Source: Styela clava (lineage: Eukaryota). Taken from it: a stretch of 64,000 bases of DNA. Shown in pieces: positions 26,965 to 63,059 of the stretch. The notes under the pieces are model-generated. The model ran no database searches, was not told where the DNA came from, and was given only the letters and a program-made list of their open reading frames with translations. Numbering within the stretch: the stretch's first letter is position 1; the number at the start of each line of letters is the position of its first letter. The translations under genes were made by a program, and so were the position numbers. The stretch is from NCBI RefSeq assembly GCF_964204865.1, contig NC_135262.1, positions 13,888,001-13,952,000 on the forward strand, given 5' to 3'.

Positions 26965-28780
26965 TTATGGTTTCTCGGTTTCGCTTTTATCTGAAACTGT
27001 TGATACTTCTTTTATTTGTCCAGTTGCATAGTTATCGCTGATTGTCGTTCCGCTGGATATTTCCGGTTTATTCAGGTAAAATCTAACTCTTGCATAGCTT
27101 TTGCGAACCGGCCCTTGTTGTTGAGTGTTGAGGGCGGTCTGAGTTGTAAGTTTCTGCACAGAACCATATTCAATTTGTTTGTAATTAGCAAGTGTCAAAA
27201 AAACTACCAAAAAACTTATTAAAGCGCCTTAGTAATGTATCATCCGCAGGTCTATTCCATACATTATTACACTGAACTAAAATCGATCTAGTCATTATAA
27301 ATTGGACTAATCGTGTGTATTCAAAATCGGATAAATACTACTTTTTTAAAATTAATTTTCTCGCTGAAAAAAACTGTAGCTCAACTTGCGCTAAGCAAGT
27401 AAAAACGTCGTGTAAAACAAATATTACGATTTAGTAAAAATAATGAATTTTGAAACTCACAGTACAAATACATATGCTGAAAACGCATACCAATGTCAAT
27501 AGGACAACTGAAAAAGAAGAAAAGAATAGGAGATTTATAGAGTGAACAATATTTTCTAGCGGATTCCAGGAGTTGAGACGCTTTTGTCAATCACCTAACG
27601 ATACAAAAATTCTTCTAAAACACAAGGAGCATGCAAGTGGAGCGCCATCTTGTGGCGTTTGCGTTTGTTAATAAGCATTACAAAAATAAAATGTTTGCAG
27701 TTGTCACGATAAAAAAATCAGCCTAATATCATCAAAGTGAAACAGATATGACATCACTTCCAATTAACTATCATTGTATTTATTTCAAAATAGAATTCAC
27801 GACTGGGACTGGGCTAAAACAACGCTGCCACCATACATTTTAATAAAACTTACTTATTACTAATCCTACGACGACTATTGCAATCCAATTTGGATTAGCA
27901 CATGTGCATTCACACTTACAAATGCAGGTAAAATTTTTGTCGTCTTTAGAATTTTCCTCAATCTATTTAAAATAATATGTGTGAAAAGTAAGAAAATCCA
28001 AACGATTGAATATTCAAAATCGCATGCAATTATTTATTTTATTGACTCAACTTTAGAAAAGCGTAGAAATTTGTTTTGTAAGTTCAAACATTACAGAGAA
28101 ATAGCTCCCATATGTCAAAATGCAACAAAAAATGTCACATTAAAGTTTAATAAAAGTATGCCTGAAATATAAAATATTATATAATATAAATGATTAACTG
28201 GATTCGTGACTTAATCTGTTTTTAAAGTTAATAATTTGAAGGTTTTGTCGGGAACCTTGTTCGAGATTAACTCAAATGCAACTTGAAAAGCAAGGTCGCC
28301 GAATGACTCCGATTACAGATATCTGTGTAAAATGAAAATTCAGGTTCACGGGGTTTTAGAAATTTATGTCTTTGAAAATTAATCAAAATATTTATTATCA
28401 AATAACGTCATTTGGTGATTCACGACTCTTAAAATTTTGTCACGGGCATTTTAGAGCCTCTTTTCAATTATATTAGTTCATTTAAAAAAAGTTCTTTTGA
28501 TCAAATTATTTTCTCATAAAAACCAACAAAAATCGTTGATAATTAAAATTAGAGACTTTTTCTATTTTTGCTAAACTATACAAATGGAAGTGAATGAGCC
28601 AACTGTGGACATGGGCAATCAGCTTATAGTGATTTGAGTACCTCTGCTTTAAGGAAATTTTATGGGAATTCGTTACATTGCTTTCAATAAAATAAAATTC
28701 CGTATGATCAGAAAACAGTATCTTACCTCTTGACACCATGCTATACTTGCTACGAATAACACGATTACTAATTTCCGCAT
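26965..28780 (-). CDS. Small single-pass membrane protein (micro-receptor M1, ~122 aa)
   Basis: Exons 28780-28727 (signal MRKLVIVLFVASIAWCQE), 27962-27854 (IEENSKDDKNFTCICKCECTCANPNWIAIVVVGLVI), 17-nt 27507-27491 (IVLLTL), 27153-26965 (KLTTQ...SYARVRFYLNK...SETEKP*). An alternative phase-1 acceptor near 27203 also keeps frame. Confidence 0.75.
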
Positions 28781-31700
28781 TTTATCTAACCACAATAAAG
28801 CAATACTAATCTGATATTGACCTTTGATCTCAGTCACTGCCTCGTTATAGAATCTTTAGCAGGAATAGATGAACTACAAATGCTTTGAATGCACTTTTCA
28901 AGAAATCAAATATTTTGGTTTTAGTTTTTAAACTGCATTACTACTGATGAACTATTTTCAAATCTATTTTTATAGTAAATAAAAAGATTGAAAACCGCAT
29001 AACCAGTGACAATGCAATGTTCGTTTTCAATTTTTCAAATGCAACTTTCTACAGAAATTACCAGTTACCTTATACCGACTGAATTAAATATACGAAACAA
29101 TATGTTTATATGCAGCAATGACTGGCTGTTGCATTGTTCGCATGACGCTTGTCACGTTCACAGATGTAACGATTAATGAACAAAATTTCGACTGAGACTC
29201 GAGATTTAATTATTTGTCTTTTGAACGGCACATATTTTAAAACGATAAATTAATGAGAAAATTGTGTCGGTAAATTCTACGAGAGGTATGACAATTTTCT
29301 CAAATTTGGGAAAATTTCCGGACAATTTGATGTTGCCAAATAAGACTGTTGGAAACATTTTGTACACTATAAAGTTAAAATCTAAATATAATATGAAATT
29401 ATGAATGTACACAGGTTTAAGCGTGACATAAAGTTTGTTTGTAGCACAACGCGTGGTGGACGCTGGTTGGACACGTTAGTGGACATAGCGATCGTTTTGT
29501 TATAATGTTGTTGTGGTTCTTGTTCTTCTTTGTCACAGAAAAAATCGCTTTTTTCTCTGATCACCGGAACAATAGCTTTGGAATTTTCAGTGCTCAAAGA
29601 TTAAATTATTCTCTAAAATGCTATTACTTTTATTTATTTTAAATATTCCGGTGAGCTGTATGGAATTCGATTTTTGTGTTCTACCACGTCATTAACATTT
29701 GCCACTATGTAGCGCTACGTGTCCATATATTTGAGCATAGCTCTCTTGTTTTTATTTATATCATCAGGTATACCATATCATTTTATATTATATCGTTCAT
29801 GAGAAAATATGACAAACTAAATCAATTACTTGCAAATATTTTATTCTAAATACGAGTTGTATCCATTTTATTGCTTATAGTTATTGGGATAATATATTTA
29901 ATGCCCGTTGATACCGTTGTTTAACCTGGGTTCGATCGAACCCCTGGGGATCGGTGGAGCTGTTGCATGTGTTTTAAGAAGGTCTTCTGGAATAGTTTTT
30001 CTCACAATTATGAAAATATCCAAACTTGCGTTGCGTTGTCTCGCACAGATATAATCCTATTGGAACTGTCAATGACGGTTATACTTTAGAAAGTTCACTA
30101 CTTCGAAAACTCGATTTATCGTCACAGATGGAGCGAGTGTACTTCTGTATGATAGCGTTTTTAGATGTTTTCTGCTTATAGCTTCACAATATCTTAGGTT
30201 GTTAGTTACAAACCTCGGGGGTTTAAGCCCAATATTTGCGTGATCGACACCTCATTCAAAATATACTATTAAAAACTACATGTTGCAGACAAGTTGAAAG
30301 TCGAAATTAAGATAGCATGAATGAAAGTGAAATCAGATAAGTTTGAAGATTACTGACTGATAAAAGTTGCGGCAAAGGGTATTATAGCAGTTCAATATAG
30401 CAGCTCTTGTTGCAATTTATGTTGTTATAACCAGTCGAGAATCCATAGGGTTGATGGTTGATCCCTCTTTGATAATGCATGCCATTTGAATTCAAACCTA
30501 AAAGCCTAACCTGTGCACAAAAATAACGCAAAAAATTCATAGTCTATCAATTGAAGACGGTTGAATTTTGTATAACCTGCTGCACAAAAGTAGCTTCCCC
30601 TTTTTTTAAGTGCAAATGCTCCTGGTTTTCAACTGTTCGAAACGTTGGATTTCGGCGGAAGCTTGCAGAACAACTTATGAATTCAGCAGGTTCACAAAGG
30701 TTAAGAACGACTACTACCTTATACCCAAGAGAATATACTATTGCTTACTGCGTTATATCGCTATTCGATTCAAAGAATTTGGTTTTGGATGTGGCGGCAT
30801 AAACTGTTCTAAATCAGTATGATCGTCCCTCGACTGACAGCGTTTACAATTCTAGCGGTTGAGTGCACGCTTGGTTTGAAACCAGAGAATAACTTGACTG
30901 ATTTCAATAAAAACGTAATGACCACTCGTATAGTCACATGTGAACAAAGTAGCATTACATTCAACCGAACCATCAAGCCAAAGTACTAACAGTGTATTGC
31001 AGATATACTTTGGGAAACGTCTTGAAATTAAACCATTTTTTTACTAAATACCTCCCAAAATCTGCCTGTTGGTATATTCAGACGGTGGTATGAAACATTC
31101 ACTAAAGCAATGTCTTACTCCAAGGTTTTTGAAATAGGTTTATGGTTTCCACAAACTTTTCAAATCAATTGATTGTCGAATAAATAACCTTCCGTACATA
31201 TGCCGTCAGGCGAAGCGTCTGATACCTGCGACCAGAATCATCAACTTTGAATGTACAATTGATTGTTCATAGCGTTTGCTTGAATTTTCCACACTCAGAA
31301 AATTTGTATATCACATCCTATTTTACAGTATTGATTTGCTTGAACTATTTTTTGTATAGTTGTTTATCTTTTATCATTGTCTATCATGGTAACTTCGCGA
31401 GCATGAGTGTAAATGCAGGAAGTTGAAGAAATTTTGTATTCGACACATCAACTGGGGCAATAATAAGATTATTATGCCAAACAAGAGACAAATCATACAC
31501 GAACGGAAGAATTCTAACTAATAAGAATTTAAAACAATTAAAAGGTCAATGAGATGAAAAATCATTCTGATCGTTGCTCCTGAAAGAATTTTCTGCTTTT
31601 GTGTACTATTTATATTTTAGTTGTGCTCTGATATAATTGTTCCATAATATTAATTGGAGGGTATTTATTATGATTTACTCAATTACCTAATTGCAATAGT

Positions 31701-32745
31701 AAATAAAAACATAAAAAAGGCAATAAAAATAATTTGACGAATGATTAAAGAGTTCCTGTCGTTTAAAAAACAGAATATTATATATAGCACCAAAATACTT
31801 TTCAGCGGTGTTTTACGAAATCATATTCAGAAAAGAATTTTTAGATTGATGAGTCCACACACAATATCAAAGCCGTATTCGGTCTAGACCGGAGATACAT
31901 TCTACTTGAAAATAAAAGCAAGGCCAAATAATTGAACATCATTCATTTAAATGAATAAATGAATTTATAAATTTAGCACAAAATATAAGTAATATTTTAT
32001 TCAAATTAGCGGATGAATTTTCTGTAAATAATAAAAAAATTAATTATAAACTATAAAATTATACGGGTCATGTCAAACTTGCTTTAAAAATAATTATGAA
32101 CAATTGTTGGTAATTTACATGTCAGTAAATCGTATGCCAATAAGTGTCATGGGTGTCGTGAAAATCCTAGAGTGTTTTGCAACATGTATTAATTAGAAAA
32201 ATTATTTGCAATTTTCATAAATAGTATATTTGCATAATTTTGATAGCTTGCATAAAAAGGTTGTGACAAACAGGTAAAGATGTATTATCGCGAAACCTAT
32301 TTCGAGTGTCAGACATCGTTTGCTAAAATCGCCCAGGGCGAGGCAGCATCCGCAGACTTCCTCTGAAAAATAATTTATAAATCACATGAATGTTGAATAC
32401 TTGATGTAAATAAAGGTCGATTGGGTTTCCGTTTTGGTCACATCCTTACATTGAGGAAGGTCTGTGGTTTCAAGTCTGTGGTTACTTTTGAAGCGTTTAG
32501 TATGTGAACCGAATCTCATTTTACACCCGCGACATCAAATTTCAAGAATTGAAACATTTTGTAAATATCATTTGTCGGCTTGGTCAAATTAAAAGGTTTG
32601 AGGTGCAAAGAATATTGTAGGAAGTAATGGGATATATAAAACTGATCAAAATTCAATCAAAAATGTGTATTGAATGCTAACGAAACTTTTTGTTTATTAG
32701 ATACACAATTAGGAAAATTATTTTCAAAATTACTAATATATTTAC

Positions 32746-33335
32746 CGATAGACATTTTATGACAACAGCCGCAAGTAGAATACCTGAAAAATAAAAAAAT
32801 GAACATTAGAAGTTTGACACGTTGAGCTTGCTATCCGTATATTGGTCGTGATATGGTAAATTGTTAAAATTTGCTACAAACTTGATGAAAATTTTATTTA
32901 ATTGAAAAAAAAAAAGATTTTATTCTGAGAATTTGACTTCAGCAAATTCATATAGGCATTGTGTTTAAATATTTATGCATTAATTGGGATTAGTTTTAAA
33001 AATTTGTAGCAGCCAAACAGTCGGTGTATTATGCTGAGTTTTCAAAATTACGACCACGACTGATTATTGACCAGCTAAATTCATGCATTTAGTCGGTAAC
33101 ATCAACAATTTGAAGTTGTCCTATCGGTTTACCACTTTCCCATTATATGTTAAGTATATTTCATGTTTCATTTTTTGACAATTTCTAGTACTATATACTT
33201 ACATAATATTACGACTATTATAACAGCTTGCCATGGTACTACAATTATTGAGTCATTTCCTTTGCAATCACATTCATTATCACAGTTACATTTAGGCGTT
33301 TGGTTGGCTGTACTCGTCATAGCAGGAGTTGTAAT
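32746..33335 (-). CDS. Small single-pass membrane protein (M2), core exons only; ends unresolved
   Basis: Exon 33335-33203 (ITTPAMTSTANQTPKCNCDNECDCKGNDSIIVVPWQAVIIVVIL, phase-1 donor) and exon 32783-32746 (CILLAAVVIKCLS, phase-0 donor). Candidate upstream exons 34100-34046 and 33861-33832; candidate downstream acceptor near 32362. Confidence 0.7.
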
Positions 33336-33579
33336 CTTGATGTAAAAACAAGAGAGATCAAAAATATTTACCTTTACTGAAGATTGAATGAAACAACTAC
33401 AAAATAAATTAAAAATAGAATATAGTAAAGATCAAAATAGTTGTTCCATATATATCTCAATACCATGTTAGGGTACAAACGCACAGAAAAAGGATGGATT
33501 TCAATAAGAAATCGATAAAGATTAACAAACTTATCGGTAGCATGGGGCCTCCTAAAATAAAGTCATACGACCATTTGTT

Positions 33580-33693
33580 GGCGCTTCGTAGGTTTTCTTA
33601 CCCAAGATGACGTACAACCTGAACAACCCTAACCTGGTACCCATACTATGTTCAGGTTGTGCGCCATCTTGATACGAATACTTCGAGAGCACC
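33580..33693. mobile_element. Palindromic GG-ended MITE
   Basis: Perfect 8-bp TSD catttgtt (33572-33579 / 33694-33701); same core as 5398 and 20869. Confidence 0.8.
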
Positions 33694-36600
33694 CATTTGT
33701 TGAAAATTATAGTGTGACATAAAGTATTTCAAACTATACGGCTCGTGGCAAGGAAATGATAAAATGCAACATATATTGCAATAGTAAGCGGTAGACTTTT
33801 GCTTAAAATGTAAAAAAAGTACGAAAATTACCTATGATTACTGAAATTATAATTGGATCAGCTATCAATGAAATAGTCTGAGGATTTATACTTGTTAAAT
33901 TGGACATTATCAATTACAATTAAAATATTTGTTTGTGATGAATATTGCAAATTCTACCATTACGATTCTACATAGAATAATATTAATTAATAATGTAGTT
34001 CTATAATAGCATGTATTTGAACAGGAAGAAATCTTGCCCACTTACCGCCAATACAAAGCCATTCATCTGAAACAACATCAAGCAACGAATGAAAATCCAT
34101 ATTCTGTTTGCTACCTGAGCCATTTCCTTTTCGAAAGCATTTAAAATGTAATTAGTATATAGTATTTTACAGTGGAATTGAAACCACTATACAGTAAACA
34201 AAATAAATAGGAAATCATTAAACTGACGTCACTTCATTAACGTTTGAGGAAATAATTCTGCATTGGGAACATCTATCGTTGAAGAAGTCGTGTTTAAATG
34301 AATTCTATTGACTTGACTCATGTCACTTCACTCATGCTAATTGTTAAGATTACTCTCATGTAGTAAATTTGGTAGTCCATAGCGAACCTAAAAGATTCCG
34401 GTCCTCGTTGCTTGTTCAGCGACATATTTGTAGTGAAAGCGAGAAAGCGACGTATAAAATATTTTCCTCAAAAATTGACATCCACTTATGATAAAGACGA
34501 AAAAGCACAGTTAACAAAATGCAAGTCATTCATTGTCCATTGCGGTAATTGGCCGTGAAGTACGAGAAGTTATATTGGATCGCATGCTTTATGTTACATT
34601 GCTTGACTCTCGACACAGCTATTGCATTTTTGGAATATATCAACTCTTAAACTAAATTCCATCCAACTTTGGTAACTTTCTACGTGCTAACGATCGAATT
34701 TAAAAGAAAAAAACGATACAGACTTTTGATGATCTGATTAAATACTAACTACTTCAACCTTGTCACATTTGAATCAACATCTTGAAATTTTGATAAAAAA
34801 TTTTAACAAAAAAAAAAACGCACCTAAGCGTTTGCTTTGAAGGGAAATTCCACCGTGTTGTAATAGTTTATCTGGAGGGCATGAGAATAAACTCTCGGCG
34901 TGACGGCGGTTCACATTTTTGCGAGATTGGGCAAGCGATACTGAATTACGTAAGACTGGAATTCAAAACTTCGTAGATAATCGTTTAATCTTGGCCGTCG
35001 ATAGTCTGAACGCAAATTGCACGTCTATAACACGTCTGACATTTAGCAATGAATGAAGAATTTTTGAATAGCGCACGCTATGACTACAACAATCAATATT
35101 GCGCTTATATTCAATACGCGACATTATTCATATAAATCTAAATAATATTAAATACTATCTTGTCCTATTGATTTGATACGACTCGCATCACCAATTTACA
35201 TACCTCTTGCTGTGTTTCGTTTTTTTCTACTTCTGTAAGTCTGAAGCTGGTTTTTAAAATGCTACAACTGTTATTTGCAAATGTATCAACTGTTGAACAA
35301 ATGTAAAGATGTCTTTGAATAATCACTCGACCACGATGGCTTAGTCGCGCGTATCGAGATTTTTATCAATGGAAATATTAAGACATGTAGCATGTCCGGA
35401 GTTAGTTGACGCAAAATTGTTCATGAAGCCTTTAGCATCTTGGCATATATATATTTGGCATGAGCATGTGAAGGCCAAGAAATACCTCAACCACGTTTAA
35501 AAAGGATGTAAACTCAAATTAGGTAAAGATAATAACCGACCACTGCAATATTGAATAATTATAAAAAAACATCTGTAAAATTGCGGCGTTGTACTATCCA
35601 GCGCATATATTGTCGTGGTACTTAAAGTATATGGACCCCTAATAGTCAAAAAATACTCAGCATGATTTGCTAATAAACTCATATACTTGATAAAAGATTA
35701 ACTGGACTTCATTCCCTTCAGTAAATATTGAAGAAAATTTATTTTTACCAGAGTTCGTTTTGAATAACTAATCGCCAAAAGGTAACAAATCAATAAACCC
35801 GAGCGCACTTTAACAGAGCTAAATCGAAAGTATTTTATCATATTGAAAAGTTCATCAAATTGCGTTCTGGTATTTGAACAAGTTAATATTTCAAATACTA
35901 GAAGTAGACAAATAATATATATACGAAGCTCACCGATCCAGTCTCAATATAACATTGAAAGTAACTCACAAAAGAATTGTGTTTACTTACTTACTCTCAG
36001 CTTGAGCTGCTCGTCAAACGGATTAGGTTTAAGCGAAATTTTCTTGAATAAATTAGCAGATGGATAATTCAGCTTTTAGATCGCAGTATTGCGAGAATTA
36101 ATTTTGAATAATAAGTCACAATAAAACATTCATCATTCTTAAAATAGGTTTCGTTGTAAGAATTCACACTATGAAAACTATGGCATAAACGTTAAGTCAA
36201 GCGATTTAAAATTTGAATAGATCAAACTTGCCATTAACGTCCAAGTTTACAATTACCCCTTTAATTAACCCAATCGATATCTTGGAATTTCCCCCTCAAC
36301 TGTCATATTTTGAGCAAAAGCGGTTGCCACTGCGAATTTTTCATACTGAAACACATGAAACACTGAGGATTGAGAAAGTGAAATTCTCCCATGATGTAAT
36401 TTCTGTACACGAAAACACACATAACGTCATTCGCACGTTCAATTCAAGTTCAAACTATTTTTACATGATAGTGAATCTTAAGTACAGTTTCTTGTGAACA
36501 GTGCTCATGAGTTTTGAAATAACATATTTTGTGATAACAGGTATGTGCTACTAAACGTCAAAACCTAAGCGGAAATATTCTTAAGCGTCAAATGTAAGAC

Positions 36601-37841: not shown

Positions 37842-39037
37842 TCATGGGTCTTTATCTTTATTATTGTTTTCCTCTTTCTTTTTTGTTCCAATTTGATCAT
37901 TAACTTCCATATCATTCATAATTATGTCAAATTTTTCTATTCGTTGTTGGTGTTGGAGGTCTTTTTCGGGGACTTCATTTTCTACAATTGCCTCAGTTTT
38001 GCTGTTTTTATGCTCATTCTCTGTGCCATTGGCTTTATTATTTTCTTTATTAACATTTTGTTTTTTGTCAGCATTGGCAATATTCAAATTGTGAGACGAC
38101 ATAGGTCTGGCAGGAACCACTCTTTGTTCAAATACACGATATTCATCGTATTTTCTTAATGATGGTTCGGAAATTTGACGACCGTCAATGTCGTAAAACC
38201 GTATTTCTCCTCCTTTCCTTCTACCTTCTATAACTCGAGATGATTTTTCGGGATCATATGCTGATTGTCTGCTGTATTTGTACTGAAAACAAAAATATTT
38301 TCAAGAACCATATAATTAATTCATGCGATTTGCAAAATGAAAGCCTTGTTAAGGCATTCGAAACACGACATAAAAATTTTGAAACAGAAAATCTAAGAAT
38401 AAATACGACTTAAACACATACAGATACGTGGAACTGATTTATACACCAGCTAAAAAGTGTATTCATACATCAAGAAGGCTGGACAACATATCATTATTGT
38501 AATTCATAAAAATATTTACTCACCTTGTAATTTGCATAAATTAACACAGCAATACAGAGTAAACCTGTAAAATAAATAGCCTCATTATAGAGGTAAACTG
38601 ATGCAGTATTAGCATGATACAATGATAGTGTCAATAATTTTTCTAATATTCAAAATGAAAATGATTTAACGAAGATATTTAGCAAAATTGGCCTAATCAC
38701 GTGATTGTGATTAATTAACACGAGGTGCTCTGACTAAATTTATAATAAATATTATTAATATATTAAAATAAATATTATTTGTATACGGAAATCTTAAATC
38801 ACCAATTTTGTTCTCAAATCGAATCTTGATAGAATGAGTGAACAAGTGAAAAACGCATAATATCATATGACTTTTCTCTTCTTTCATGTATTAGGTACCT
38901 GCAATAACAGCTGGAATAATAATCCCCCATTGCGTTGATGACGGATCATCTTCAACAACACATATACAAACGTTGTGACATATCTTTTTCAAGCCTTCGG
39001 TACAATTGGCATTGACAGGAGTTGTAAAAGTTGTCAT
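37842..39037 (-). CDS. Small single-pass membrane protein without signal peptide (M3, 206 aa, Tyr-containing tail)
   Basis: Exons 39037-38899 (MTTFTTPVNANCTEGLKKICHNVCICVVEDDPSSTQWGIIIPAVIA), 38564-38524 (GLLCIAVLIYANYK), 38282-37842 (YKYSRQSAYDPEK...IRFYDIDG...KYDEYRVF...KDKDP*). An in-frame TAA lies 4 codons upstream of the ATG within the same exon. Confidence 0.82.
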
Positions 39038-45996: not shown

Positions 45997-47073
45997 ATGA
46001 GTATTTCTCAACTTATGATAATCTACACATTCTGTTTTTCTGCATTTCTTTTGACATATTCAGCATCAATCAGTGTAAGTACTACAATACGAATTCAATT
46101 TTTTTTTAATATATCTCACTTTCTGTGAGGAAATATTTTGATTGGATTTACTAGTCATAATCATTGACTCGGTTCTAGTTGGAAATCAGTCATCATTTGT
46201 CAAAGAATCTAACTACCTTGACGTGTCTGAATGGAATAACTCGCACATGTCATAATTTAATCACCAGTGAGACTTAACTGAGTGATAGAATCGACTTTGG
46301 GTCAGAATCGACGCTTAGATAACCATAAACAGATTTGACTACCACGCACTGCTTAGATTTTTATCATATTCCCAAGTTCTTCAAATTCCCATTGACTGCA
46401 AGTTTAGCCCGTCACCTTCTTATATTTGCCGAACATGATAATGGAACCGTTAAAATTTATAGGCCTGCGTCTTATGAGATCAGTGAATGAATCAGGTGAA
46501 ACTAATATAAAAGTGGAAGTGTACATAAATGTTAAATATATCAGAATTACCTTTGTTAGTTGTTGTCGTATATGAACTTCCAGTATATTAACCATAATTA
46601 TTGTTTTAACTCTAGACCCAAACACCAGATATCTCTGAACTCAAAAACTCGACGAAATGTGCTCAGGGTTCAAATTTAAACAACAAAGACGATAGAAATA
46701 ACTTCCCGTGCCCTGAAAAGACCAGACATCTGGGTTGGATTGTGGCAGTAATTTTTGGTGGCATAGTAGGTGAGAAAATGTACAATTTATAAAAGATATG
46801 CAATAATATGATATATATGTGCAATAAATAGTTGTAATATAGCAAGGTTCATTGGTTTCTATATATATTATGGGAATTTCGGCTTCACCATTAGATTGCG
46901 TTAAATCCTGTTTTGTTTTAGCTCTCTTCATAATTGTAATAAGTATGAAAAGATTAATTTGCGGGGGACTATCACATCCAGGAGGAGGAACAACAAGAGG
47001 AGGAGGTGGTGGAATAGGTTTTGGTGGCGGGGGGTTCTCTTCTGGAGGAGGAGATGGGGGTGGCTGTGGCTAG
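45997..47073 (+). CDS. Micro-receptor M5, 127 aa, Gly-rich tail
   Basis: Exons 45997-46074, 46616-46769, 46922-47073: MSISQLMIIYTFCFSAFLLTYSASIS | TQTPDISELKNSTKCAQGSNLNNKDDRNNFPCPEKTRHLGWIVAVIFGGIV | ALFIIVISMKRLICGGLSHPGGGTTRGGGGGIGFGGGGFSSGGGDGGGCG*. Confidence 0.9.
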
Positions 47074-48959: not shown

Positions 48960-49477
48960 AGATATATGAGTTAGAATAGGAAATCAAGTCAAGACTGTGA
49001 CAGAATTTAGGAAGCTTAAAAAATCTACACATGCTGTTTCGTTATCGTATTCGTTAGGTGATGTCAGTATCAGAATGAATGAACTAAATTGTACCAGCAC
49101 GTAAATTATAAAGGTAAAGTACACGAGAGAGGAATTTTCTCAATAAAAATGTGTATAAATCTGATTAAAGTGTAGTGAACAAAACTATTGCATGTACTAA
49201 CTACTAACTATTGCATATCGCATGAACTAACTTTAACAAGACTGTAGCAAAATGTAATGCAAAATGTAACCAAATCAGTATTTTGTGACAAATTGGCCAC
49301 AATTCAACAGAAAAATATTGGTCAAAGATTAGTAAAATATTGTCCTTCATGTGCGAACATATATATTGCTTTTTAAATTATGCTTTTTCTTTATTTGGAG
49401 TCAGAACGCTACAAATACATTAAAAATGGGGTTATGTTTTATGCAGTCGGAACCATCTCAATAACAACGTTTAATAA
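48960..49477 (+). pseudogene. Fused relics of M7-like and M8-like first exons
   Basis: 48975-49075 matches M7 exon 1 (ATG now AGG, donor lost). 49435-49470 matches the start of M8 exon 1, with ~50 bp deleted and the Helentron inserted next to it. Confidence 0.7.
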
Positions 49478-50511
49478 TTGGATCTCCGCTGTATAGGAGA
49501 CCCTTATTGTCAGTCGTTCTGTTGGATCTCCGCTCTATAGGAGACCCTTATTATCAGTCGTTCTGTCTGTCTGTCTGTCTGTCTGTGTATCTGTCTGTCT
49601 GTCTGTTTAGATGTAGCGTCTTAATGGCTGGACCAATCTGGATGAAATTTTTCACATGGGTTATCCTGTCACCCTAGTAATGTGCGTTTTATAGAAAGTC
49701 CAGATAAATGTTTCGTTTCCATGGTAACAACGAAAAACGCTCCGATCGTTATGAAATTTCTATTTTTTTCACAGTTTATCGCCGTTTTCTCGCCAACCAA
49801 GTCGAAAATTAAAATTCCAAGAGCGCTTCCTTCCGCATGGCAAAGTACTCTTTCCAATAAGTCGTCTTTGGTCTCGATACTTCATAAACTGGAGAAGCCT
49901 TAGGGATTTCAGTGAACATAATTTCCCCATTTAGTCACAGTATATCAGTCACGTGAGTATGTCAACGGAACGCGCAGCGTTTGAAATGAACTCAACGGAA
50001 CTGGTGAGCCGGTGCAGGTGTTCTTGATATACGGAATTATTATTTGCTTGAGATTTGATGTACTTCTCGCTGTTAGTGGGTGGTCTGTCTGTCTGTCTGT
50101 CTGTGTATCTGTCTATCTGTCTGTCTGTCTGTTTAGATGTAGCGTCTTAATGGCTGGACCAATCTGGATGAAATTTTTCACATGGGTTATCCTGTCACCC
50201 TAGTAATGTGCGTTCGAAATGAACTCAACGGAACTGGTGAGCCGGTGCAGGTGTTCTTGATATACGGAATTATTATTTGCTTGAGATTTGATGTACTTCT
50301 CGCTGTTTGTGGGTGGTTCACCCAAACGCTGGCTACAGTTTTTTTAACTATTTAAGTCTATAAATTAGGATTGCTATATCCGAATCAAACTGGTAAGCAG
50401 ATATCGTTGTATAAATATGATAAATAAATAATCCTATTAAACCGTGAAGTACCGGGGAAAATGTTGAGTCTTGCATGTATATATGTTCCTTCAGCTTAAG
50501 TTGTAATCATA

Positions 50512-51565
50512 ATGCCTAGGCGAAAGAAAACTATTAAGCGATTATTGGAAGCACAAACACGCCAAAATTTGGACGAATGTTGCAGCAGCAGTCAGATTGA
50601 AGATGACCCGCATAGCGTACAGTCTACTACTTACTCGCAACGTTACTGACGTTACACAACATTTCAGTAATAGAATGAAAGTTATTTTTAGACACTTGCA
50701 AAAACCAGGTCTGTTGGGCAAATACAAAGTTTCTGACTATTTCTTCCGAATCGAATTTTAGATGCTAGGTGCACCACATGTCCATTCTTTATTGTGGCTG
50801 CAGGATGAAAATGGCAAAATTCCCCCTTGACACTTGCAAAAACCAGGTCTGCTGGGCAAATACAAAGTTTCTGACTATTTCTTCCGAATCGAATTTCAGA
50901 TGCGAGGTGCACCACATGTCCATTCTTTATTGTGGCTGCAGGATGAAAATAGCAAAATTCCCCCTCGTTATGATTCAGAAGAGTCTCGATCTGCTTGTGA
51001 AGCATTTATCGATTCTGTGATAGCTGGAAAACTCCCTCAGGGTAACTCTGATATTCTGGACACAGTGTCTACTTTTCAAAGACATAGCCACACTTTTACA
51101 TGTCGCAAGAAGAGTCGTAAAATTACTATTCATTCCGATGAAGGCCATGGTGTTAATGATTGTACAATAGAAAGACAAAGAATTCATTTAAACACGTGCA
51201 GATTCAAATTTCCCCACTTTCCAATGCCTAGAACAATGATCCTTGATGCACCAAATGAAAATGTTGACCCAGAAGATCGCAAAATATGGAAGAGCGATTA
51301 TGTCATGCTTAGAAAATGTATTTTACGTCAAACTCATTCTGATCGAGACACTCAATGTAATCAAGAGTTTTTGACCCTAACATTTAATGATTTCCTTCAT
51401 GCAGTGGGCCTAACGGAAGAAGCATATTATAATGCGCTTCGGGCATCTCTTGCTGAGAATAAGTGTGGATCGCAGGTGTTCTTAAAGCGTGACTGTTGTG
51501 ATTTGTGGACCAACAATTACAACAAGAACATTCTGGAAATACACCAAATGTCCTGGCTACCCTGA
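50512..51565 (+). pseudogene. Fragmented Helentron Rep (HUH endonuclease) ORF
   Basis: N-terminal MPRRKK... from 50512, then a jump to the Rep core: DYFFRIEFQMRGAPHVHSLLW (HUH motif), FQRHSHTFTC, CRFKFP, LKRDCCDLWTNNYNKNIL. Homology breaks near 51548; no helicase region. Confidence 0.85.
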
Positions 51566-51885
51566 GTTTCAGAAAACTCTGATTGTGATGAAAAAGCTTC
51601 ATCCATTTCACCCTTTTTAGTGGGACTTTTGAGGCCTGTTATAGTTCTGTTCATTACTGTTATTTTAGCGTTCCGTGCTTTTATTACACGCTCCTGTCGT
51701 TTGTAACTGCTTTCCATTCTTTTAATCAAAGCTGCAATACGAGCTGCAGACGCTGATACTTGTTGTGTTGCTAAAATAGCGTACTGGCTGTCGTACCCTT
51801 TTTTACGAAGGTGGTCGGCAAGTGCTTCTACGGAATCTTTTATGAATTCTGCATCACGTTTACAATCTTTGAAATACGCCGTCAT
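51517..51885 (-). CDS. Antisense ORF inside the Helentron, probably helical/coiled-coil, 3' truncated
   Basis: 122-codon ORF (MTAYFKDCKRDAEFIKDSVEALADHLRKKG...) starting ~235 bp from the element 3' end, convergent on Rep. Confidence 0.45.
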   Translation of the reverse strand: MTAYFKDCKRDAEFIKDSVEALADHLRKKGYDSQYAILATQQVSASAARIAALIKRMESSYKRQERVIKARNAKITVMNRTITGLKSPTKKGEMDEAFSSQSEFSETQGSQDIWCISRMFLL

Positions 51886-53560
51886 TGCCCCGCAACAAAT
51901 AATCGTCAGCTAGTGCAAAACCTACTCGCCTCTCGCCTATTTCTTGCGAGGAAATTTTCATGAATTCACTTCCAAGCGCACAAATTAAAGAGATTTAAAT
52001 CTGAACGAAGTTAGGCCGACCACTAAAGTGCTACAGAGACTAAAATAAATTGGATCCTCGCGATATACTGTATGCCGCGGGCCTGGGTGTCAGCGGAGAT
52101 CCTGGACGCCTACCGGCTTGTACTTATTTACTAAGTACTAAAAGAAGTTTTTTTTATAGTCTTTACTTTGTTCATTGCCGGAAAAGCCATAATAAAATTT
52201 TTTTTAAATTGTAATTTAAGAGTTTTTATATAAAGATTCTTCAAAAAACATAAACAATTATTGCTTTGTAATAAAACTTTAATTTATTTTCAAGTTGGCA
52301 ACCATGACGTTCAAGCTTAAAAAAAGATACCTGCCTATTCGAATAAATCAAACTAGATATAACATGATTTATCTAAGAAGCACGCACCATGTAAATAAAA
52401 TAAGATATTACTCTCGTTGAATTTAAACTATTCAATAGATAGGACAGTAAACTTTGCCATCATTTCTAAGATTTTCAGGTCAAAATTGCCCGTACTATTT
52501 CATAATTTTTATTTCAAAATCAATGTGCAATTTTGTGATTTGTCATATTATTTCCTATAACTACATACTTTAATTTCGCCATTGCTATCAACACACTACA
52601 TATTGAAAGCACTTAGTGAGTTGGGAAATTACCTTAACAGAGAATTCAGTTTTGACAAAACATTGTAATCGATACCTCAAGCAACTGTGATGGGCATTTC
52701 CTAACAATTATGTCTAAGCCGAGAGATTTTGAATTGAACAGAAACAGTACAAAATCAAGACAGCGGAAAAAATAAACATGTATGTAAAATGATAATTTTT
52801 TGTATCATATATTGAAGCATTTTTCTTATCTTTGTGATATTTCATGAAACGAGTCCGTTGTAATACTAACCTAATGGTAAAAGTGCGCGTATTTTTTATC
52901 TTTGATTGAAACCTTCTATTGGAAAAGAAATGGTCGCAAGATGATCAAAAAATCGAACTCTTCTAAACTGATGGTGATTTTAATAGCCAAGGAAAGTCGG
53001 GTTTAGTAAAAATATAATTGGCTATGAATATTGCCGGACAAAATGTTAGACGTTTAAAATGAATTCCATTTTTCTAATATTTAAACATCACAATACAATT
53101 TTAAACGAACTAAAGATCGTGACAAAAAGTGTGACGTTATATATTGAAATAACATGTGATTAATGGATAGGCAAATGCTTGGTATACTACAGGCAATCAT
53201 TTAGGGTGTACAACTAACATAAATGAGATTGAGATAATCGCATGTAGCAGACGATTAAATAACAACAGGCAAGATACCATGCATGTAGTAATATTTCGTC
53301 AAGTATTAATGAAATACTTTCTTGCTTTAATTTGATTCCAGTGTTTTCTACGCGTCGCAAACTTAAGAGATATATTGTTAGAAAAACTTTAGTGAAATAT
53401 ACCAGAAGAATTAAATAAAAAATTACCGTTTTGACATTTAGTACGCAGTTTTCTAAGTAGGGTACACAACAGCTAATCAAAAAACTATTTGAGGCTCACG
53501 AATTTAATTTCATTGTATTCTCTTTGTATTTTGTTATGGAAGTTGAAGAAGCGTAACAAA

Positions 53561-54708
53561 ATGAGTATTTCTCAACTTATGATAATCTACACATTCTGTT
53601 TTTCTGCATTTCTTTTGACATATTCAGCATCAAACAGTGTAAGTACTATTATACGAATTTTATAACTACCTAAAATATTTTAATTGGATTAAATAGCTGT
53701 ATTGGAAAGATCAAAATCATTGACTCGATTCGAGTTGAAATGGAGTCACCATTAATCAAAAACTCTAAGTACCTCGACGCGTTTGAATGGAATAACTTGA
53801 ACATGTCATCATTCATTCGCCAGTGAGACTCAACTTAGTGATAGAATCGACTTCGGGTCGGACTCGTCACGTAAATAATTGTACTATAGACCTGACTCAC
53901 GGGTTTAAATAATTCTACCAAGCACTGTACTTACACAATTACATTTTAAATCATATTCACAATTTCTTCAAACACCCATAGACTGCCTGTCATCTTCCCA
54001 TATTTGCTGTCCATGATAATGAAATCGTTCAAAGTTACGAGCCTGCGTCTTACAAGATCAGTGAATGACGACTAATATAAAAGTGGAAGTGTACATAACT
54101 ATTAAATATATCCGAATTTCCTTTGTTAGTTGTCGTCGTATTTGAACTTTCAGTATATTAACCATAAATATTGTTTTAACTCTAGACCCCAAAACCAGAT
54201 ATCTCTGAACTTAAAAACTCAACGAAATGTGCTCGGAGTTTAAAATTAAACAGCACTGATAATAGAAACAGCTCCACGTGCTCCGAAAAGCCCACAGATC
54301 GGGGTTGGATTGTAGCTGCAGTATTTGGTGGCATAGTAGGTGAGAAAAAGTACAAATTATTGAAGATATGCTAAATTTATGTAAACGAGGTAAACCGAAT
54401 AACGAATGGCGTTAGTTTATTAACAGACACTTTGTAGTTATATTTTTTTGCATTGTTCTATTGTTTAATAACTAGATGTAACACAGCAAGGATTTCTATA
54501 CATATTGGGGATTTCGAATTATCCATAAAATTGCGTTAAATTCTATTTTCTTTTAGTTCTTTTCATAATTGCGATAATATACCAAGTAATATGTAACAAA
54601 GAACTATCAGATTCAGGAGGAGGAGGAACAAGAGGAGGAGGTGGTGGATTGAGTTTTGGTGGCGGGGGGTTCTCTCCTGGAAGAGGAGGCGGCGGGGGTT
54701 GTGGATGA
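53561..54708 (+). CDS. Micro-receptor M6, 127 aa, Gly-rich tail
   Basis: Exons 53561-53638, 54186-54339, 54557-54708: MSISQLMIIYTFCFSAFLLTYSASNS | TPKPDISELKNSTKCARSLKLNSTDNRNSSTCSEKPTDRGWIVAAVFGGIV | VLFIIAIIYQVICNKELSDSGGGGTRGGGGGLSFGGGGFSPGRGGGGGCG*. Confidence 0.9.
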
Positions 54709-58648: not shown

Positions 58649-60267
58649 ATGGAATCAAGTCAAGACTGTGGCAAAGTTTTGAAAGCTAAAACAATCTACA
58701 CATTAATTTTTGTTATATTTTTATCGACATATCCAGCTTCAACTATTGTAAGTATCAGAATAATTTGTGAAGTTCTATTACTAGATTTGGACTCTACAGA
58801 TTAGGATTAAACTAAATTGTATCAGAACGTAAATGATAAAGTTATAGTATATCAGAATGAAATATTTTCAATAAATATTTGTATAAATCTGATTAGAGTA
58901 TATTGAACACTGTTCCATTTTTAATGAATACATAAATACACATATTCTGACGTTAATGGCACTATAACAAGAAACTTTTTTTTTTAAATTCAAGACGAAT
59001 GATGTAGCCTACCTTAATAGGTATTTTGTTTTAGCCATAAGGAATTTGATAAACCTTAGAAATAATTTTTAAATAAACATTTATACAGAGAGAAGAACAT
59101 TTAAATGCATCCACACAACAGAATTCAACAATGTGTGTACAATGCACAAATTCAAATTGCACAAGGAATAGAAATGAATCTATGTGTCAAGGTACAACTA
59201 AGTATCGCGTTTGGATTGCAGGCGCTGTTGTTGGGGGTTTAATCGGTTAGTAATAAAAAATGTTATAGCATTAGCAATTTAAGGATTTAGAAAAATATAC
59301 CCAGAAAAGAAATCTAAGTGTCAATAATTTTTGAACATACAAAAATCTTTAACCTGACATTTTCAATAGAAATGCCATTTTTGTTTCAAATTACCATGTT
59401 GTGGATTGAATGTCGAGTCAAATTGATCACATTCGTTAGTCTAAGAGATAAAATAGTGTTATTATGTAATAAAAACGCCTCTCATTTGTAGATTCTCATT
59501 TTCAGCTCTCCTCGTGATAATTTCTGCTTTAAAAAACTGCCGTCAAGTGAGTACAAATGTTTTTTGAACTTTCTTTAAAGCTTCATAAAATACAACAAGT
59601 AAAATAAATAGAAAATTTTCAACAAGTGTTTATGATTATACATTGTTTTCAACAAAACTATTATATTGAATTCGGTGCGAGTTTCACGCCCTTACCCCAA
59701 CCAGGAATTGAATAATTTATTAAGAATCATATTATGAAATAAAATAATCATATTCGTCCGGAAATAAAACGATATTTTGCAAATACATTTGTAACTGCTT
59801 TTACCTATACTAGTTTGAAAATACGGCGCGCAACACTTACAAAGATTCATAATTGATAATAGTGTTAATAACTAATAGTATTTTATAATCCAAAATAAAT
59901 ATTTGGATATTTCAATAAAAAGAAATTGTCATTTTAACAGGTAATTTGTTCAAAAAGTGATATACGATTAGGAAATTCAGGAAACTCAGTTGTCCAGTTT
60001 TGGGCACCGAGCAATGGATATAACAACAGAACGCAAAATCACACCTTGCAATCGAGTTCAACTACAAATAATCACTTTGCAGCAGACAGCACAAGCAATT
60101 GCAACGTAATAAGCAATCATTGTTTGCCTCATGGTGGAAACTATGATGTTGGTTGCCATTCAGGAGGATTCGAATCGAGTGGAGGCGGAGGTGGCGGATG
60201 CAGTTTTAGTGGCGGAGGAGGATGTGATTCTGGGGGCGGGGGTTGTGATGGAGGAGGGGGTTTTTAA
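58649..60267 (+). CDS. Micro-receptor M7, 207 aa, 4-Cys ectodomain, long Gly/Cys tail
   Basis: Exons 58649-58747, 59089-59245 (REEHLNASTQQNSTMCVQCTNSNCTRNRNESMCQGTTKYRVWIAGAVVGGLI), 59506-59546 (ALLVIISALKNCRQ), 59941-60267 (...GGGGGGCSFSGGGGCDSGGGGCDGGGGF*). Confidence 0.88.
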
Positions 60268-61710: not shown

Positions 61711-63059
61711 ATGTTTTATGCAGTCAGAACCATCTCAATAACAACGTTATTTCTAGCATTGGAAATTACAGCAAGTAGCAATGTAAGTATATACAATTTA
61801 ATAATACTTATTTACTAAGTACTGAAAGAAGTATTTGCAGTCTCTATTTGTTAATTGTCGGGAAGAGACATATTAAAATTTTGCCTCCGTTGTGAGTTGT
61901 AACAATGAAATCTTTTTATGTAAGATTATTTCACTAAACTTGAAAAAAATGTATTGCTTGGTCATAAAACTCCAATAATTTCAAGTTGCTTACAATAAGT
62001 TTAATGCACTCTTATTCATAATATATTCATTATAATTCACATGCATCTTGGCACTGCTGAGTCATAGTCTGAAATGGTTATGAATTCATTTTTAAAATGC
62101 GCTCCTATGCACAGTGGTAAAATCCTTTTTATTTTTTATTTTTTCAAAATTCTTGGTTAATTAGGTCTTGTCTGTGTTATATATTTTTTAGAAAAACAAA
62201 GCAGGTGGAGTTTATACCATAAATTCAACGCATTGTGAATATTGCTACAACACTACTTGTAAAATAAGACACGATGCCATATGTGGTAACTACAATCTAT
62301 CAGATAACAAAGCTATTGGGATAGGCATATCAGTCGGAGTTGTTGGTAAGCACGAAACACAAAATTAAAATTATTTTTAACAAGGAAGTAATTTGAATTG
62401 GAAAACACAATGGATGTGTTCATACATTAAGTTTGAAGTCGCTTCATGTCCACAACCTGCTATGCTCTGATAACGCAAAACTAGACGTGATTTAATTTTG
62501 GTTATTATTAGAGTAGAGAATTGATAGATAATCTTTTACTAAAACAGCAAATAACATATAGCATTGGCTTCGTCTTGATTTTTTTTTCCGATTTCCAATT
62601 TATTCTTCTGCAAGTGATTTCAAATTTTAAAGAAGAGAAAGGGAGTTGGTTGCAATAAAATGTCAAAATATGAATTTCGTAATTATGCTGTTAAGTAAAA
62701 TAACCTAATATAAAAAATTAATATTGCTGAATTGTCAAAGTAAAGTATGTTTACTGTTCATAATATTCACGAAACAATATAGCAGTACTGTCCCACAGGC
62801 TTTAAAAGTCTTCCGCTGCAGTTAACAATCTGAGACAACCCAATCAGAATAAGCCCAAACCAATGAGAAAATCCTGGTGAATCTCAAATAATTTACTCGC
62901 TTTAGAGGCGCACGATTCAAATTTAATTTTGTGATTGTGTTTTCTGTTTCTACTCATTGCTTTCTAGTATATTTAAAAAAGAACTTTTTTTTCCAGAGCG
63001 CTATTGTTATCATGTGCTTTTATGTTTCAGGTTTTATTCTGATCGTCTGGCTATGTAAT
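61711..63059 (+). CDS. Micro-receptor M8 (last exon not found, probably beyond the window)
   Basis: Exons 61711-61782 (MFYAVRTISITTLFLALEITASSN), 62192-62345 (KNKAGGVYTINSTHCEYCYNTTCKIRHDAICGNYNLSDNKAIGIGISVGVV), 63031-63059 (GFILIVWLCN, donor gtgagt). Confidence 0.82.

What the first reader, a model, noticed from the sequence alone, without database searches (positions are those of the whole stretch)
26965..63059. Array of at least 8 unannotated micro-receptors sharing one exon plan
Seen: the recurring plan is signal exon (phase 0; absent in M3, unresolved in M2), one exon with a 30-45-aa Cys/N-glycosylation ectodomain plus the first half of the TM (mostly starting at Trp: WIA, WIV, WGI, WQA), a phase-1 intron inside the TM, then the TM end and tail. 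Three genes lie on minus and five on plus, head-to-head around 39-43 kb. Ectodomains and tails are highly divergent while the plan is fixed. Inference: a diversified lineage-specific surface family (recognition receptors, adaptors or accessory subunits) that ORF-based annotation would miss. Common ancestry of the plus and minus groups rests mainly on gene structure.
Basis: partly seen in the sequence, partly recalled or inferred. Interest (0 to 1): 0.87.

Follow-up and report, generated by a model that had tools for sequence, protein, structure and literature searches.

The report
Sea-squirt cluster of tiny membrane glycoproteins
Eight neighbouring genes of the sea squirt Styela clava encode very small single-pass membrane glycoproteins built on one exon plan; they are real and expressed, have no detectable relatives elsewhere, but most are already in the public annotation as "uncharacterized proteins", so this is an undescribed orphan family rather than a hidden one.

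Summary
All eight gene models exist at the stated places with canonical GT-AG introns, and each has a phase-1 intron in the middle of the membrane helix. Spliced transcript contigs from three studies confirm every junction of the two genes I could test, A and M3. Six models (A, C, D, E, M2, M3) are residue-for-residue identical to NCBI RefSeq proteins of Styela clava named "uncharacterized protein LOC...", so "unannotated" is wrong for at least six of eight. B could not be checked and M1 was not found.

The five plus-strand genes are clear paralogs made by tandem segmental duplication. They share a conserved signal exon and an invariant NST-x-C motif, and four have Gly-rich tails. Two broken relics lie beside a Helitron-like insertion.

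The three minus-strand genes share only a Cys motif, the exon plan and adjacency. Profile comparison of the two groups gives 5% probability. The exon plan is rare, with 0 hits in 160 kb of other genome sequence, so common ancestry is likely but unproven.

No Pfam, PDB or cross-species homolog was found. Function is inferred only: small glycosylated, probably palmitoylated bitopic proteins with disordered tails, more likely accessory or scaffold subunits than stand-alone receptors. Interest is modest.

The parts
43226..44247 (+). Gene A, 109 aa, 3 exons: 43226-43303 signal; 43588-43735 ectodomain plus first half of the TM; 44144-44247 TM end plus Gly-rich tail ending GGGCG
   Evidence: Model. 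Both introns are seen as GT..AG joints in transcript contigs of 3-4 runs. Identical to RefSeq XP_039256614.2, LOC120333285.
45997..47073 (+). Gene B, 127 aa, 3 exons: 45997-46074; 46616-46769; 46922-47073
   Evidence: Model. 71% identical to C, with exon 1 matching at 77 of 78 nt. Its annotation status was not checked because a spliced sequence has no reference.
53561..54708 (+). Gene C, 127 aa, 3 exons: 53561-53638; 54186-54339; 54557-54708
   Evidence: Model. Identical to RefSeq XP_039256679.2, LOC120333345.
58649..60267 (+). Gene D, 207 aa, 4 exons: 58649-58747 signal; 59089-59245 four-Cys ectodomain plus TM half; 59506-59546 TM-end micro-exon; 59941-60267 tail with GGGGC repeats
   Evidence: Model. 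Identical to RefSeq XP_039256296.2, LOC120333015.
61711..63333 (+). Gene E, 102 aa, 4 exons: 61711-61782; 62192-62345; 63031-63059 micro-exon; 63280-63333 short basic tail
Evidence: Identical to RefSeq XP_039256194.2, LOC120332917.
26965..28780 (-). Gene M1, 132 aa model, 4 exons: 28780-28727 signal; 27962-27854 five-Cys ectodomain plus TM half; 27507-27461 micro-exon; 27153-26965 tail
   Evidence: Rests only on the open frame and canonical splice sites. A search with its tail found no database protein. No RNA test was possible. The last exon is the least certain part.
32309..34123 (-). Gene M2, 100 aa, 4 exons: 34123-34046 signal; 33335-33203; 32783-32746 micro-exon; 32362-32309
   Evidence: Model. 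Identical to the RefSeq protein of LOC120332990, P0015.
37842..39037 (-). Gene M3 coding part, 206 aa, 3 coding exons: 39037-38899 (starts at the ATG, no signal peptide); 38564-38524 micro-exon; 38282-37842 tail
   Evidence: Model. Both introns are seen in contigs of 3 runs. Identical to RefSeq XP_039255876.2, LOC120332648.
39943..40059 (-). M3 non-coding 5' exon, spliced to 39050
   Evidence: Joint 39050<39943 (CT..AC on the plus strand) in runs X1 and X3. Its only upstream ATG opens a 7-codon uORF, and an in-frame TAA precedes the main ATG.
48982..49032 (+). Relic copy of D's exon 1 (86% identity); the rest of this D-like gene is missing
49434..49471 (+). Relic copy of the first 38 nt of E's exon 1 (97% identity), cut off by an insertion; E-like intron sequence resumes at 52121-52297
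49472..52120 (.). Inserted block of tandem repeats (49.47-50.35 kb) and a Helitron-like ORF (50834-51565) that interrupts the E-like relic
   Evidence: Self-alignments. Sub-threshold Pfam Helitron_like_N match: E 8e-6, 26.6 bits against a cut-off of 28.9.

Best explanation
This is a real, transcribed gene cluster of the tunicate Styela clava, found in no other species at the sensitivity available. It encodes eight very small (100-207 aa) single-pass membrane glycoproteins.

Shown: the shared exon plan. A signal-peptide exon ends in phase 0. A second exon carries a 25-40 aa Cys-stapled, N-glycosylation-site-rich ectodomain and the first half of the membrane helix. A phase-1 intron sits at mid-helix. 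The helix end follows, as a 29-47 nt micro-exon in D, E, M1, M2 and M3, or fused to the tail exon in A, B and C. A divergent tail comes last.

Shown: the plus-strand group grew by tandem segmental duplication with birth and death, leaving 5 intact genes and 2 relics. Its signal exon and an NST-x-C motif are conserved, while the rest of the ectodomain drifts almost neutrally.

Inferred (about 70%): the minus-strand group descends from the same ancestor, judged from the exon plan, its rarity and adjacency.

Inferred mechanism (about 35-40%):
- Seven proteins insert as type I proteins. M3 inserts N-terminus-out without a signal peptide.
- They display a small disulfide-closed, glycosylated stub on the cell surface.
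- They are S-acylated on the Cys next to the helix.
- They act through the helix, which is Gly/small-residue-rich in the plus group, and through a disordered tail.
- In this view they are accessory or scaffold subunits of other membrane proteins, in the way FXYD, KCNE or LAT/LIME-type small bitopic proteins work, rather than self-sufficient ligand receptors.
For: Gene models and splice sites.

Transcript joints at exactly the predicted introns of A and M3, with zero depth in introns and in the intergenic DNA.

Identity of six models to RefSeq proteins of Styela clava.

Tandem duplication and relics.

Invariant N-S-T-x-C and a second Cys in the plus group.

D and E share C-x2-C-x4-C-x7/8-C (pairwise E 0.008).

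B versus C: signal exon 77 of 78 nt identical; dN/dS 0.85 in the ectodomain, 0.37 in the TM, 0.70 in the tail; intron identity 72-80%.

Topology features:
- hydrophobic N-terminus in 7 of 8;
- one 20-27 aa uncharged segment per protein (M2's includes one Lys near its cytoplasmic end);
- K/R after the helix;
- Cys at or near the cytoplasmic end of the helix in A-E, M1 and M2 (mid-helix in M3);
- small-xxx-small motifs in all five plus-group helices;
- 49-54% Gly in the tails of A-C and 23% in D's tail, concentrated in its C-terminal GGGGC repeats.

AlphaFold models show only the signal and TM helices with a low-confidence hairpin; the tails are modelled with low confidence, read here as disorder.

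Restriction to this locus and species:
- own-genome profile searches find only these 5+3 loci;
- a profile search of 1.84 billion representatives finds only the S. clava proteins plus two repeat artefacts.

Rarity of the exon plan: 0 hits in 160 kb of other genome sequence.
Against: No function has been measured. The accessory-subunit reading rests on architecture only.

Signal cleavage, glycosylation, disulfides, palmitoylation and surface location are all untested. SignalP and DeepTMHMM were not available.

The plus and minus groups have no significant sequence similarity. Within the minus group, pairwise E-values are only 0.039 and 0.18.

M1 has neither RNA nor database support.

dN/dS of 0.65 overall between B and C is compatible with weak constraint.

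Absence from other species is limited by what the protein libraries hold. Other stolidobranch genomes could not be searched as DNA.
Confidence: 0.7

Rival explanations
1. There are two unrelated families. The plus-strand NST-C / Gly-tail genes and the minus-strand CxC-type genes arose independently and merely share the generic architecture of small type I proteins.
For: Profile-profile probability is 5%. Neither profile hits the other group in the genome at E<=10. Tails and signal exons are unrelated.
Against: The four-part plan is identical in D and E and in M1 and M2, including a mid-helix phase-1 intron 9-11 residues after the Trp and a 29-47 nt phase-1-to-phase-0 micro-exon. M3 has the same plan apart from the signal exon. 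The plan was not seen in 160 kb of other genome sequence. The two groups are immediate neighbours.
Confidence: 0.25
2. They are stand-alone recognition receptors, the first reader's 'micro-receptors'. The variable Cys/glycan ectodomain binds a ligand, a pathogen or a self/non-self cue, and the tail signals.
For: The ectodomain evolves nearly neutrally or faster (omega 0.85) while the helix is constrained. All coding differences between alleles of A are amino-acid changes. The D alleles differ at 10 residues plus an indel. The neighbourhood holds an SRCR surface gene.
Against: 25-40 aa, partly covered by glycans, is very small for a binding domain. No tail carries an ITAM, ITIM, kinase, death or TIR-type element, and none matches Pfam. 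M3's ectodomain shows no amino-acid difference among three alleles. Ascidians are highly heterozygous in general (my own knowledge), so polymorphism alone is not informative.
Confidence: 0.15
3. They are young orphan genes with little or no selected function. They are transcribed and translatable, but drift and turn over by duplication and decay.
For: No homolog was found outside the species. Overall omega is 0.65. Two decayed copies lie in the cluster. The low-complexity tails vary in length between alleles.
Against: All eight frames are intact. The motif N-S-T-x-C and the Cys spacing are invariant across paralogs that are only 24-49% identical overall. The TM omega is 0.37. The signal exon is better conserved than the introns. 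Transcripts were found in three independent studies.
Confidence: 0.15

Closest known systems
FXYD family (phospholemman and relatives), small type I regulators of Na,K-ATPase
   Same: Size; a single helix containing conserved Gly; a short ectodomain; Cys next to the helix (palmitoylated in FXYD1, from my own knowledge); a basic juxtamembrane stretch; genes built of several tiny exons (from my own knowledge, not checked here). This is the best model for how the proteins may work, as accessory subunits acting through the helix.
   Different: No FXYD motif and no Pfam PF02038 match at E<=10. The ectodomain here is Cys-stapled and glycosylated. Gly-rich tails are unknown in FXYD proteins.
Opalin, TMEM154, stannin, LIME1 and SMIM-type small bitopic proteins
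   Same: For M3: a short glycosylatable N-terminal ectodomain without a signal peptide, one helix and a long tail modelled with low confidence. These are its nearest protein-language-model look-alikes, at 0.83-0.86.
   Different: Scores under 0.9 are leads only. The only Pfam match is TMEM154 for M2, at E 0.02 and 15 bits against a cut-off of 30, and it covers the helix. There is no sequence homology.
Single-CRD TNF-receptor family members (BCMA, BAFF-R, Fn14)
   Same: Very small Cys-rich ectodomain, type I or III topology, and a 3-4 exon gene with ectodomain, TM and tail parts.
   Different: No TNFR_c6 match. There are 2-5 Cys instead of a six-Cys module. The helix here is split by an intron. 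The tails have no TRAF-type motif that I could recognise.
Loricrin and glycine-loop proteins
   Same: The composition of the tails of A-D (GGGGF and GGGGC runs). 'Loricrin-like' was the nearest look-alike of D, at 0.76.
   Different: The match is compositional only and below any useful score. Loricrin is a soluble cornified-envelope protein without a signal peptide or membrane helix.

Membership tests
FXYD (Pfam PF02038) | PFxYD motif in the ectodomain just before the helix, and a profile match | tested here: not met
   No Pfam hit at E<=10 for the exons or the full-length proteins. No FxYD appears in any ectodomain.
FXYD (Pfam PF02038) | Small type I single-span protein with Gly in the helix and basic residues plus Cys after it | tested here: met
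   These are generic features and are not sufficient for membership.
TNFR single-CRD (Pfam PF00020) | Six-Cys CRD module with a profile match | tested here: not met
   2-5 Cys per ectodomain. No TNFR_c6 hit. No PDB sequence hit with profiles A1 or A2.
Shisa (Pfam PF13908) | N-terminal Cys-rich domain with a Pro-rich tail and a profile match | tested here: not met
   No hit. The tails are Gly-rich or polar, not Pro-rich.
DAP12 / CD3-zeta type signalling adaptors | Acidic residue inside the helix, and an ITAM or YxxM in the tail | tested here: not met
   No acidic residue lies in any helix; the only charged residue is one Lys near the end of M2's segment. No YxxL/I-x6-8-YxxL/I is visible in the tail sequences printed.
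Opalin / TMEM154 | Pfam profile match above the curated cut-off | tested here: not met
   Opalin: no hit, though that model may be missing from the Pfam copy used. TMEM154: 15.2 bits against a cut-off of 30.3, for M2 only. Look-alike score 0.84-0.86.
The family proposed here (plus group A-E) | Signal exon ending ...TY(S/P)AS.. in A-D, N-S-T-x-C plus a second Cys, and a mid-helix phase-1 intron | tested here: met
The family proposed here (minus group M1-M3 as members) | Detectable sequence homology to the plus group | tested here: not met
   hhalign probability 5%. The three genes share only the exon plan, a Trp at the start of the helix, and adjacency.

The most novel reading that the evidence does not exclude
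The cluster defines an undescribed, styelid-specific class of membrane proteins. Their loricrin-like Gly/Cys cytoplasmic tails (GGGGF / GGGGC runs ending in GGGCG) would form a flexible, cross-linkable or condensate-forming layer under the membrane. The fast-changing, polymorphic glycosylated stubs would act as individual-specific surface labels, for example in gamete or haemocyte self/non-self recognition.
Probability: 0.08. Interest if true: 0.6.

Novelty: new variant of a known kind. Interest (0 to 1): 0.3.

Why it matters
If the family has a function, it would be a compact example of how a chordate lineage invents and diversifies surface proteins. The signal exon and the split-helix scaffold stay fixed while ectodomain and tail are replaced. 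A membrane-anchored poly-Gly/Cys tail is an unusual module whose cell biology is unknown.

The practical results are more modest:
- the genes are already predicted, so nothing was missed by annotation;
- one earlier automatic name, 'YEATS domain-containing protein 2-like', was a low-complexity artefact;
- the family deserves a common name and an expression survey.

Tried and rejected
- **Typed sequence in a script (the call between 11 and 12).** All later work used coordinates or references only.
- **Spliced models in search tools.** They were never sent as joined letters. I searched exon by exon by reference. Full-length searches used only protein ids that the tools returned. The joined step was left out for B and M1, so their annotation status is open.
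- One call each was allowed, so only M3 and A could be tested against RNA.
- **Complex prediction, homodimer of C residues 27-100.** No verdict, score 0.02. This is not evidence either way.
- **AlphaFold of D and M3.** Mean pLDDT was 42.6 and 45.1, so I ran no fold search, because matches to such models are meaningless.
- **ESM Atlas look-alikes.** All under 0.9, so leads only.
- **Pfam and PDB profile searches.** Only sub-threshold, helix-driven hits: KIAA1549, TMEM154, Flu_M2 and Glycophorin_A.
- **A tail motif 'RFY...IS' that I thought M1 and M3 shared.** Not significant by BLAST.
- **Rfam and tRNA scans of the window.** Nothing found.
- **Literature searches.** Searches for the LOC identifiers, for ascidian Gly-rich single-pass proteins and for FXYD gene structure found nothing that describes this family.
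- **Reading the Gly tails as minus-strand poly-Pro ORFs (44082-44321, 54543-54761).** Rejected, because the transcript joints are GT..AG on the plus strand.


Full report
**What the window is**

The window is 31% G+C eukaryotic DNA without N runs. A protein search identified the organism: the tail exon of the minus-strand gene M3 is 100% identical to "uncharacterized protein LOC120332648 [Styela clava]". The window is contig 17, 13,888,001-13,952,000, of a 377 Mb assembly.

**Checking the observation**

I read 26.8-47.5, 53.4-54.8 and 58.5-63.2 kb on the relevant strands. I then rebuilt the eight models by coordinates. Every intron is GT-AG, most with a polypyrimidine tract before the acceptor, and every frame closes.

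Plus-strand genes:

| Gene | Exons | Length |
|---|---|---|
| A | 43226-43303, 43588-43735, 44144-44247 | 109 aa |
| B | 45997-46074, 46616-46769, 46922-47073 | 127 aa |
| C | 53561-53638, 54186-54339, 54557-54708 | 127 aa |
| D | 58649-58747, 59089-59245, 59506-59546, 59941-60267 | 207 aa |
| E | 61711-61782, 62192-62345, 63031-63059, 63280-63333 | 102 aa |

E's last exon was found.

Minus-strand genes:

| Gene | Exons | Length |
|---|---|---|
| M1 | 28780-28727, 27962-27854, 27507-27461, 27153-26965 | 132 aa |
| M2 | 34123-34046, 33335-33203, 32783-32746, 32362-32309 | 100 aa |
| M3 | 39037-38899, 38564-38524, 38282-37842 | 206 aa |

In all eight genes a phase-1 intron falls 8-13 residues into a 20-27 residue hydrophobic segment, which is 9-11 residues after the Trp that opens it. 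In D, E, M1, M2 and M3 the second half of the helix is a 29-47 nt micro-exon that ends in phase 0. In A, B and C it is fused to the tail exon.

A mechanical scan for this plan recovers 6 of the 8 genes in 73 kb. It finds nothing else on either strand, nothing in 20 shuffles, and nothing in 160 kb taken from 16 other places of the same genome.

**Transcription and splicing**

One read-laying run was allowed. I placed it on 38230-44229 so that it tests one gene of each group. The four runs come from three studies and are labelled "RNA?". Their contigs cover exons but show zero depth in introns and in the 2.6 kb between the genes, and they contain intron-less joints. They are therefore transcripts.

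- Gene A: joints 43303>43588 (four runs) and 43735>44144 (three runs), both GT..AG.
- Gene M3: joints 38524>38282 and 38899>38564 (three runs).
- M3 also has an unpredicted upstream exon, 39943-40059, spliced to 39050 (two runs).

That leader has only a 7-codon uORF, and an in-frame TAA lies directly before the ATG at 39037. M3 therefore really lacks a signal peptide.

**Annotation status**

A profile of the five plus-strand ectodomain exons was searched against 1.84 billion representative proteins. It returned four real hits. Cluster look-up and one further search give NCBI RefSeq entries of Styela clava. My models A, C, D, E, M2 and M3 are identical to these over their full length:

| Model | RefSeq protein | Locus |
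|---|---|---|
| A | XP_039256614.2 | LOC120333285 |
| C | XP_039256679.2 | LOC120333345 |
| D | XP_039256296.2 | LOC120333015 |
| E | XP_039256194.2 | LOC120332917 |
| M2 | not listed | LOC120332990 |
| M3 | XP_039255876.2 | LOC120332648 |

All are named "uncharacterized protein". An earlier version of C had been named "YEATS domain-containing protein 2-like", which is a low-complexity artefact.

"Unannotated" is therefore wrong for at least six of the eight.

B is 71% identical to C, so it would hide behind C in the 50% representative library. It could not be looked up, because a spliced sequence has no reference. M1's tail exon found nothing. M1 is either unannotated or annotated with another 3' end, and it remains the least supported model.

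**Family relations**

The plus group is a clear paralog family.

- Exon-2 proteins align with an invariant N-S-T-x-C and a second invariant Cys.
- D and E carry an extra Cys pair, giving C-x2-C-x4-C-x7/8-C (E 0.008).
- A-D share the signal-exon ending ...TY(S/P)AS...
- A-D have Gly-rich tails, which make up about half of the residues in A-C. A-C end in GGGCG and D ends in GGGGF.

Self-alignment shows that 44.2-49.5 kb matches 54.7-58.9 and 61.5-61.7 kb, and that 44.9-47.1 kb matches 52.6-54.7 kb, at 74-85% identity. These are tandem segmental duplications. The first copy of the D-E pair has decayed. Only 51 nt of a D-like exon 1 remain (48982-49032), together with 38 nt of an E-like exon 1 (49434-49471). 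The E-like relic is cut by a 2.6 kb insertion of tandem repeats and a Helitron-like ORF.

Between B and C:

| Region | Result |
|---|---|
| Signal exon | 77 of 78 nt identical |
| Ectodomain | dN/dS 0.85 |
| Membrane helix | dN/dS 0.37 |
| Tail | dN/dS 0.70 |
| Introns | 72-80% identical |

The scaffold is constrained while the ectodomain loop drifts almost neutrally. The counts are small.

The minus group is much looser. M2 versus M3 gives E 0.039 and M1 versus M2 gives E 0.18. Only a C-x3-C-x-C core and the Trp align.

Plus against minus is not significant: hhalign probability is 5%. Neither profile hits the other group in the genome. The case for one family rests on three things:
- the identical four-part exon plan, including the micro-exon;
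- its rarity in the background sample;
- direct adjacency.

I put common ancestry at about 70%.

**Distribution**

Within the genome, the exon-2 profiles and the tails of D, M1 and M3 find only these loci. Outside S. clava, nothing was found with the plus-group profile or with the M1, M2 and M3 queries. This supports lineage restriction, with two caveats. The profile is short, at 51 positions. Other styelid genomes could not be searched as DNA.

**What the proteins look like**

From:
- Seven have a hydrophobic N-terminus followed by a small-residue cleavage-type site.
- All have one uncharged 20-27 residue segment, apart from one Lys near the cytoplasmic end of M2's, with K/R after it.
- All have 1-5 N-x-S/T sites and 2-5 Cys in a 25-40 residue ectodomain.
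- A-E, M1 and M2 have a Cys at or near the cytoplasmic end of the helix. M3's is mid-helix.
- The plus-group helices are rich in Gly and in small-xxx-small motifs, and the central GG lies at the exon junction.

AlphaFold models of D and M3 have mean pLDDT 42.6 and 45.1. They give only the signal and membrane helices, a low-confidence hairpin over the Cys motif, and tails modelled with low confidence, which I read as disorder. I did not run fold searches on such models.

Pfam shows nothing above any cut-off for the exons or the full-length proteins. PDB sequence profiles find nothing.

Protein-language-model look-alikes are all under 0.9. For D the nearest is "loricrin-like", at 0.76. For M3 they are opalin, stannin, TMEM154, TMIE, LIME1 and SMIM33, at 0.83-0.86. 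This describes the class, small bitopic proteins with such tails, but not a family.

**Allelic variation**

Older RefSeq versions from an earlier assembly give second alleles.

- A differs at 4-5 residues. Five of the six coding differences seen in the RNA contigs fall on three of these residues, and all six are amino-acid changes.
- D differs at 10 residues plus a 6-residue indel in the Gly tail, and loses one juxtamembrane Cys.
- M3 differs only in its tail. Its two ectodomain SNPs are synonymous.

Six non-synonymous against zero synonymous changes in A is not significant on its own. Ascidians are highly heterozygous anyway (my own knowledge).

**Most likely mechanism (inference)**

The proteins are inserted with the glycosylated, disulfide-closed stub outside and the tail in the cytosol. 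The Cys at the inner end of the helix is a typical S-acylation site.

A 25-40 residue, glycan-covered ectodomain and tails without recognisable signalling motifs make an autonomous receptor less likely. More likely is a small partner or scaffold subunit that acts through lateral helix packing, in the way FXYD or KCNE proteins, or transmembrane adaptors, do. A glycan-carrying surface protein is the next possibility.

A homodimer test of C gave no verdict and counts for nothing. None of these steps has been measured.

**Comparison with known families**

Membership in FXYD, single-CRD TNFR, Shisa, DAP12/CD3-zeta-type adaptors and Opalin/TMEM154 was tested. It failed on the defining features in each case (see the membership table). 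The resemblance is one of architecture only.

**Novelty and score**

The genes are known to the annotation but are not described as a family in any paper I could find. They form a new, apparently species- or genus-restricted family within a familiar kind of thing: tandem, fast-evolving small membrane glycoproteins. Two features are unusual, the split-helix exon plan and the membrane-anchored Gly/Cys tails.

A specialist would find this mildly interesting but not surprising. I score interest at 0.3.

**Limits**

- One reads call only, so six genes were not tested against RNA.
- Joined spliced sequences were not sent to any search tool.

The scan had noted this same stretch before under two other titles, on the Gly tails and on the Cys pattern. 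It had not noted it on other DNA.

Noticed in passing
window 21362-26198 (+): Directly upstream of the cluster lies a gene with four SRCR domains (Pfam PF00530, E 1e-25 to 2e-30). It has its own single-exon membrane helix at 25.9-26.2 kb. Unlike the family, that helix is not split by an intron.
   Followed up: partly
window 49465-52120: A block of near-identical tandem repeats (49.47-50.35 kb, 95-100% at protein level) is followed by a duplicated segment (50691-50827 matches 50829-50965 at 97%). After that comes a 243-aa ORF with a sub-threshold Helitron_like_N match. The block sits inside a decayed E-like gene copy.
   Followed up: partly
window 39600-39770 and 42930-43100; copies at 5411-5466, 20882-20935, 33625-33687: Two short repeats reach summed depths in the thousands in the transcript contigs of all four runs, against 3-26 for the genes. 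The one at 42.9-43.1 kb forms an inverted pair just upstream of gene A and has copies at the three other listed places. The one at 39.6-39.8 kb matches only itself, in inverted orientation. No Rfam or tRNA match. Their nature (SINE or MITE, or part of many transcripts) was not determined.
   Followed up: partly
window 44082-44321, 46972-47241, 54543-54761 (-): Long poly-Pro ORFs on the minus strand are mirror images of the Gly-rich tail exons. They are not genes, because the transcripts are spliced in the plus orientation.
   Followed up: yes
gene C, window 53561-54708: The first RefSeq version of this 127-aa protein was named 'YEATS domain-containing protein 2-like'. The protein has no YEATS domain, so the name was a low-complexity artefact. 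It has since been changed to 'uncharacterized protein'.
   Followed up: yes
window 3653-9029 (+): A tandem DNA duplication at 71-83% identity joins 3.65-5.76 kb to 6.07-9.03 kb. This is the stretch that another first-stage note calls a family of secreted cationic 8-Cys peptides. I did not examine it.
   Followed up: no
window 39943-40059 (-): M3's 5' leader exon ends with an ATG that opens a 7-codon upstream ORF running across the splice junction.
   Followed up: partly
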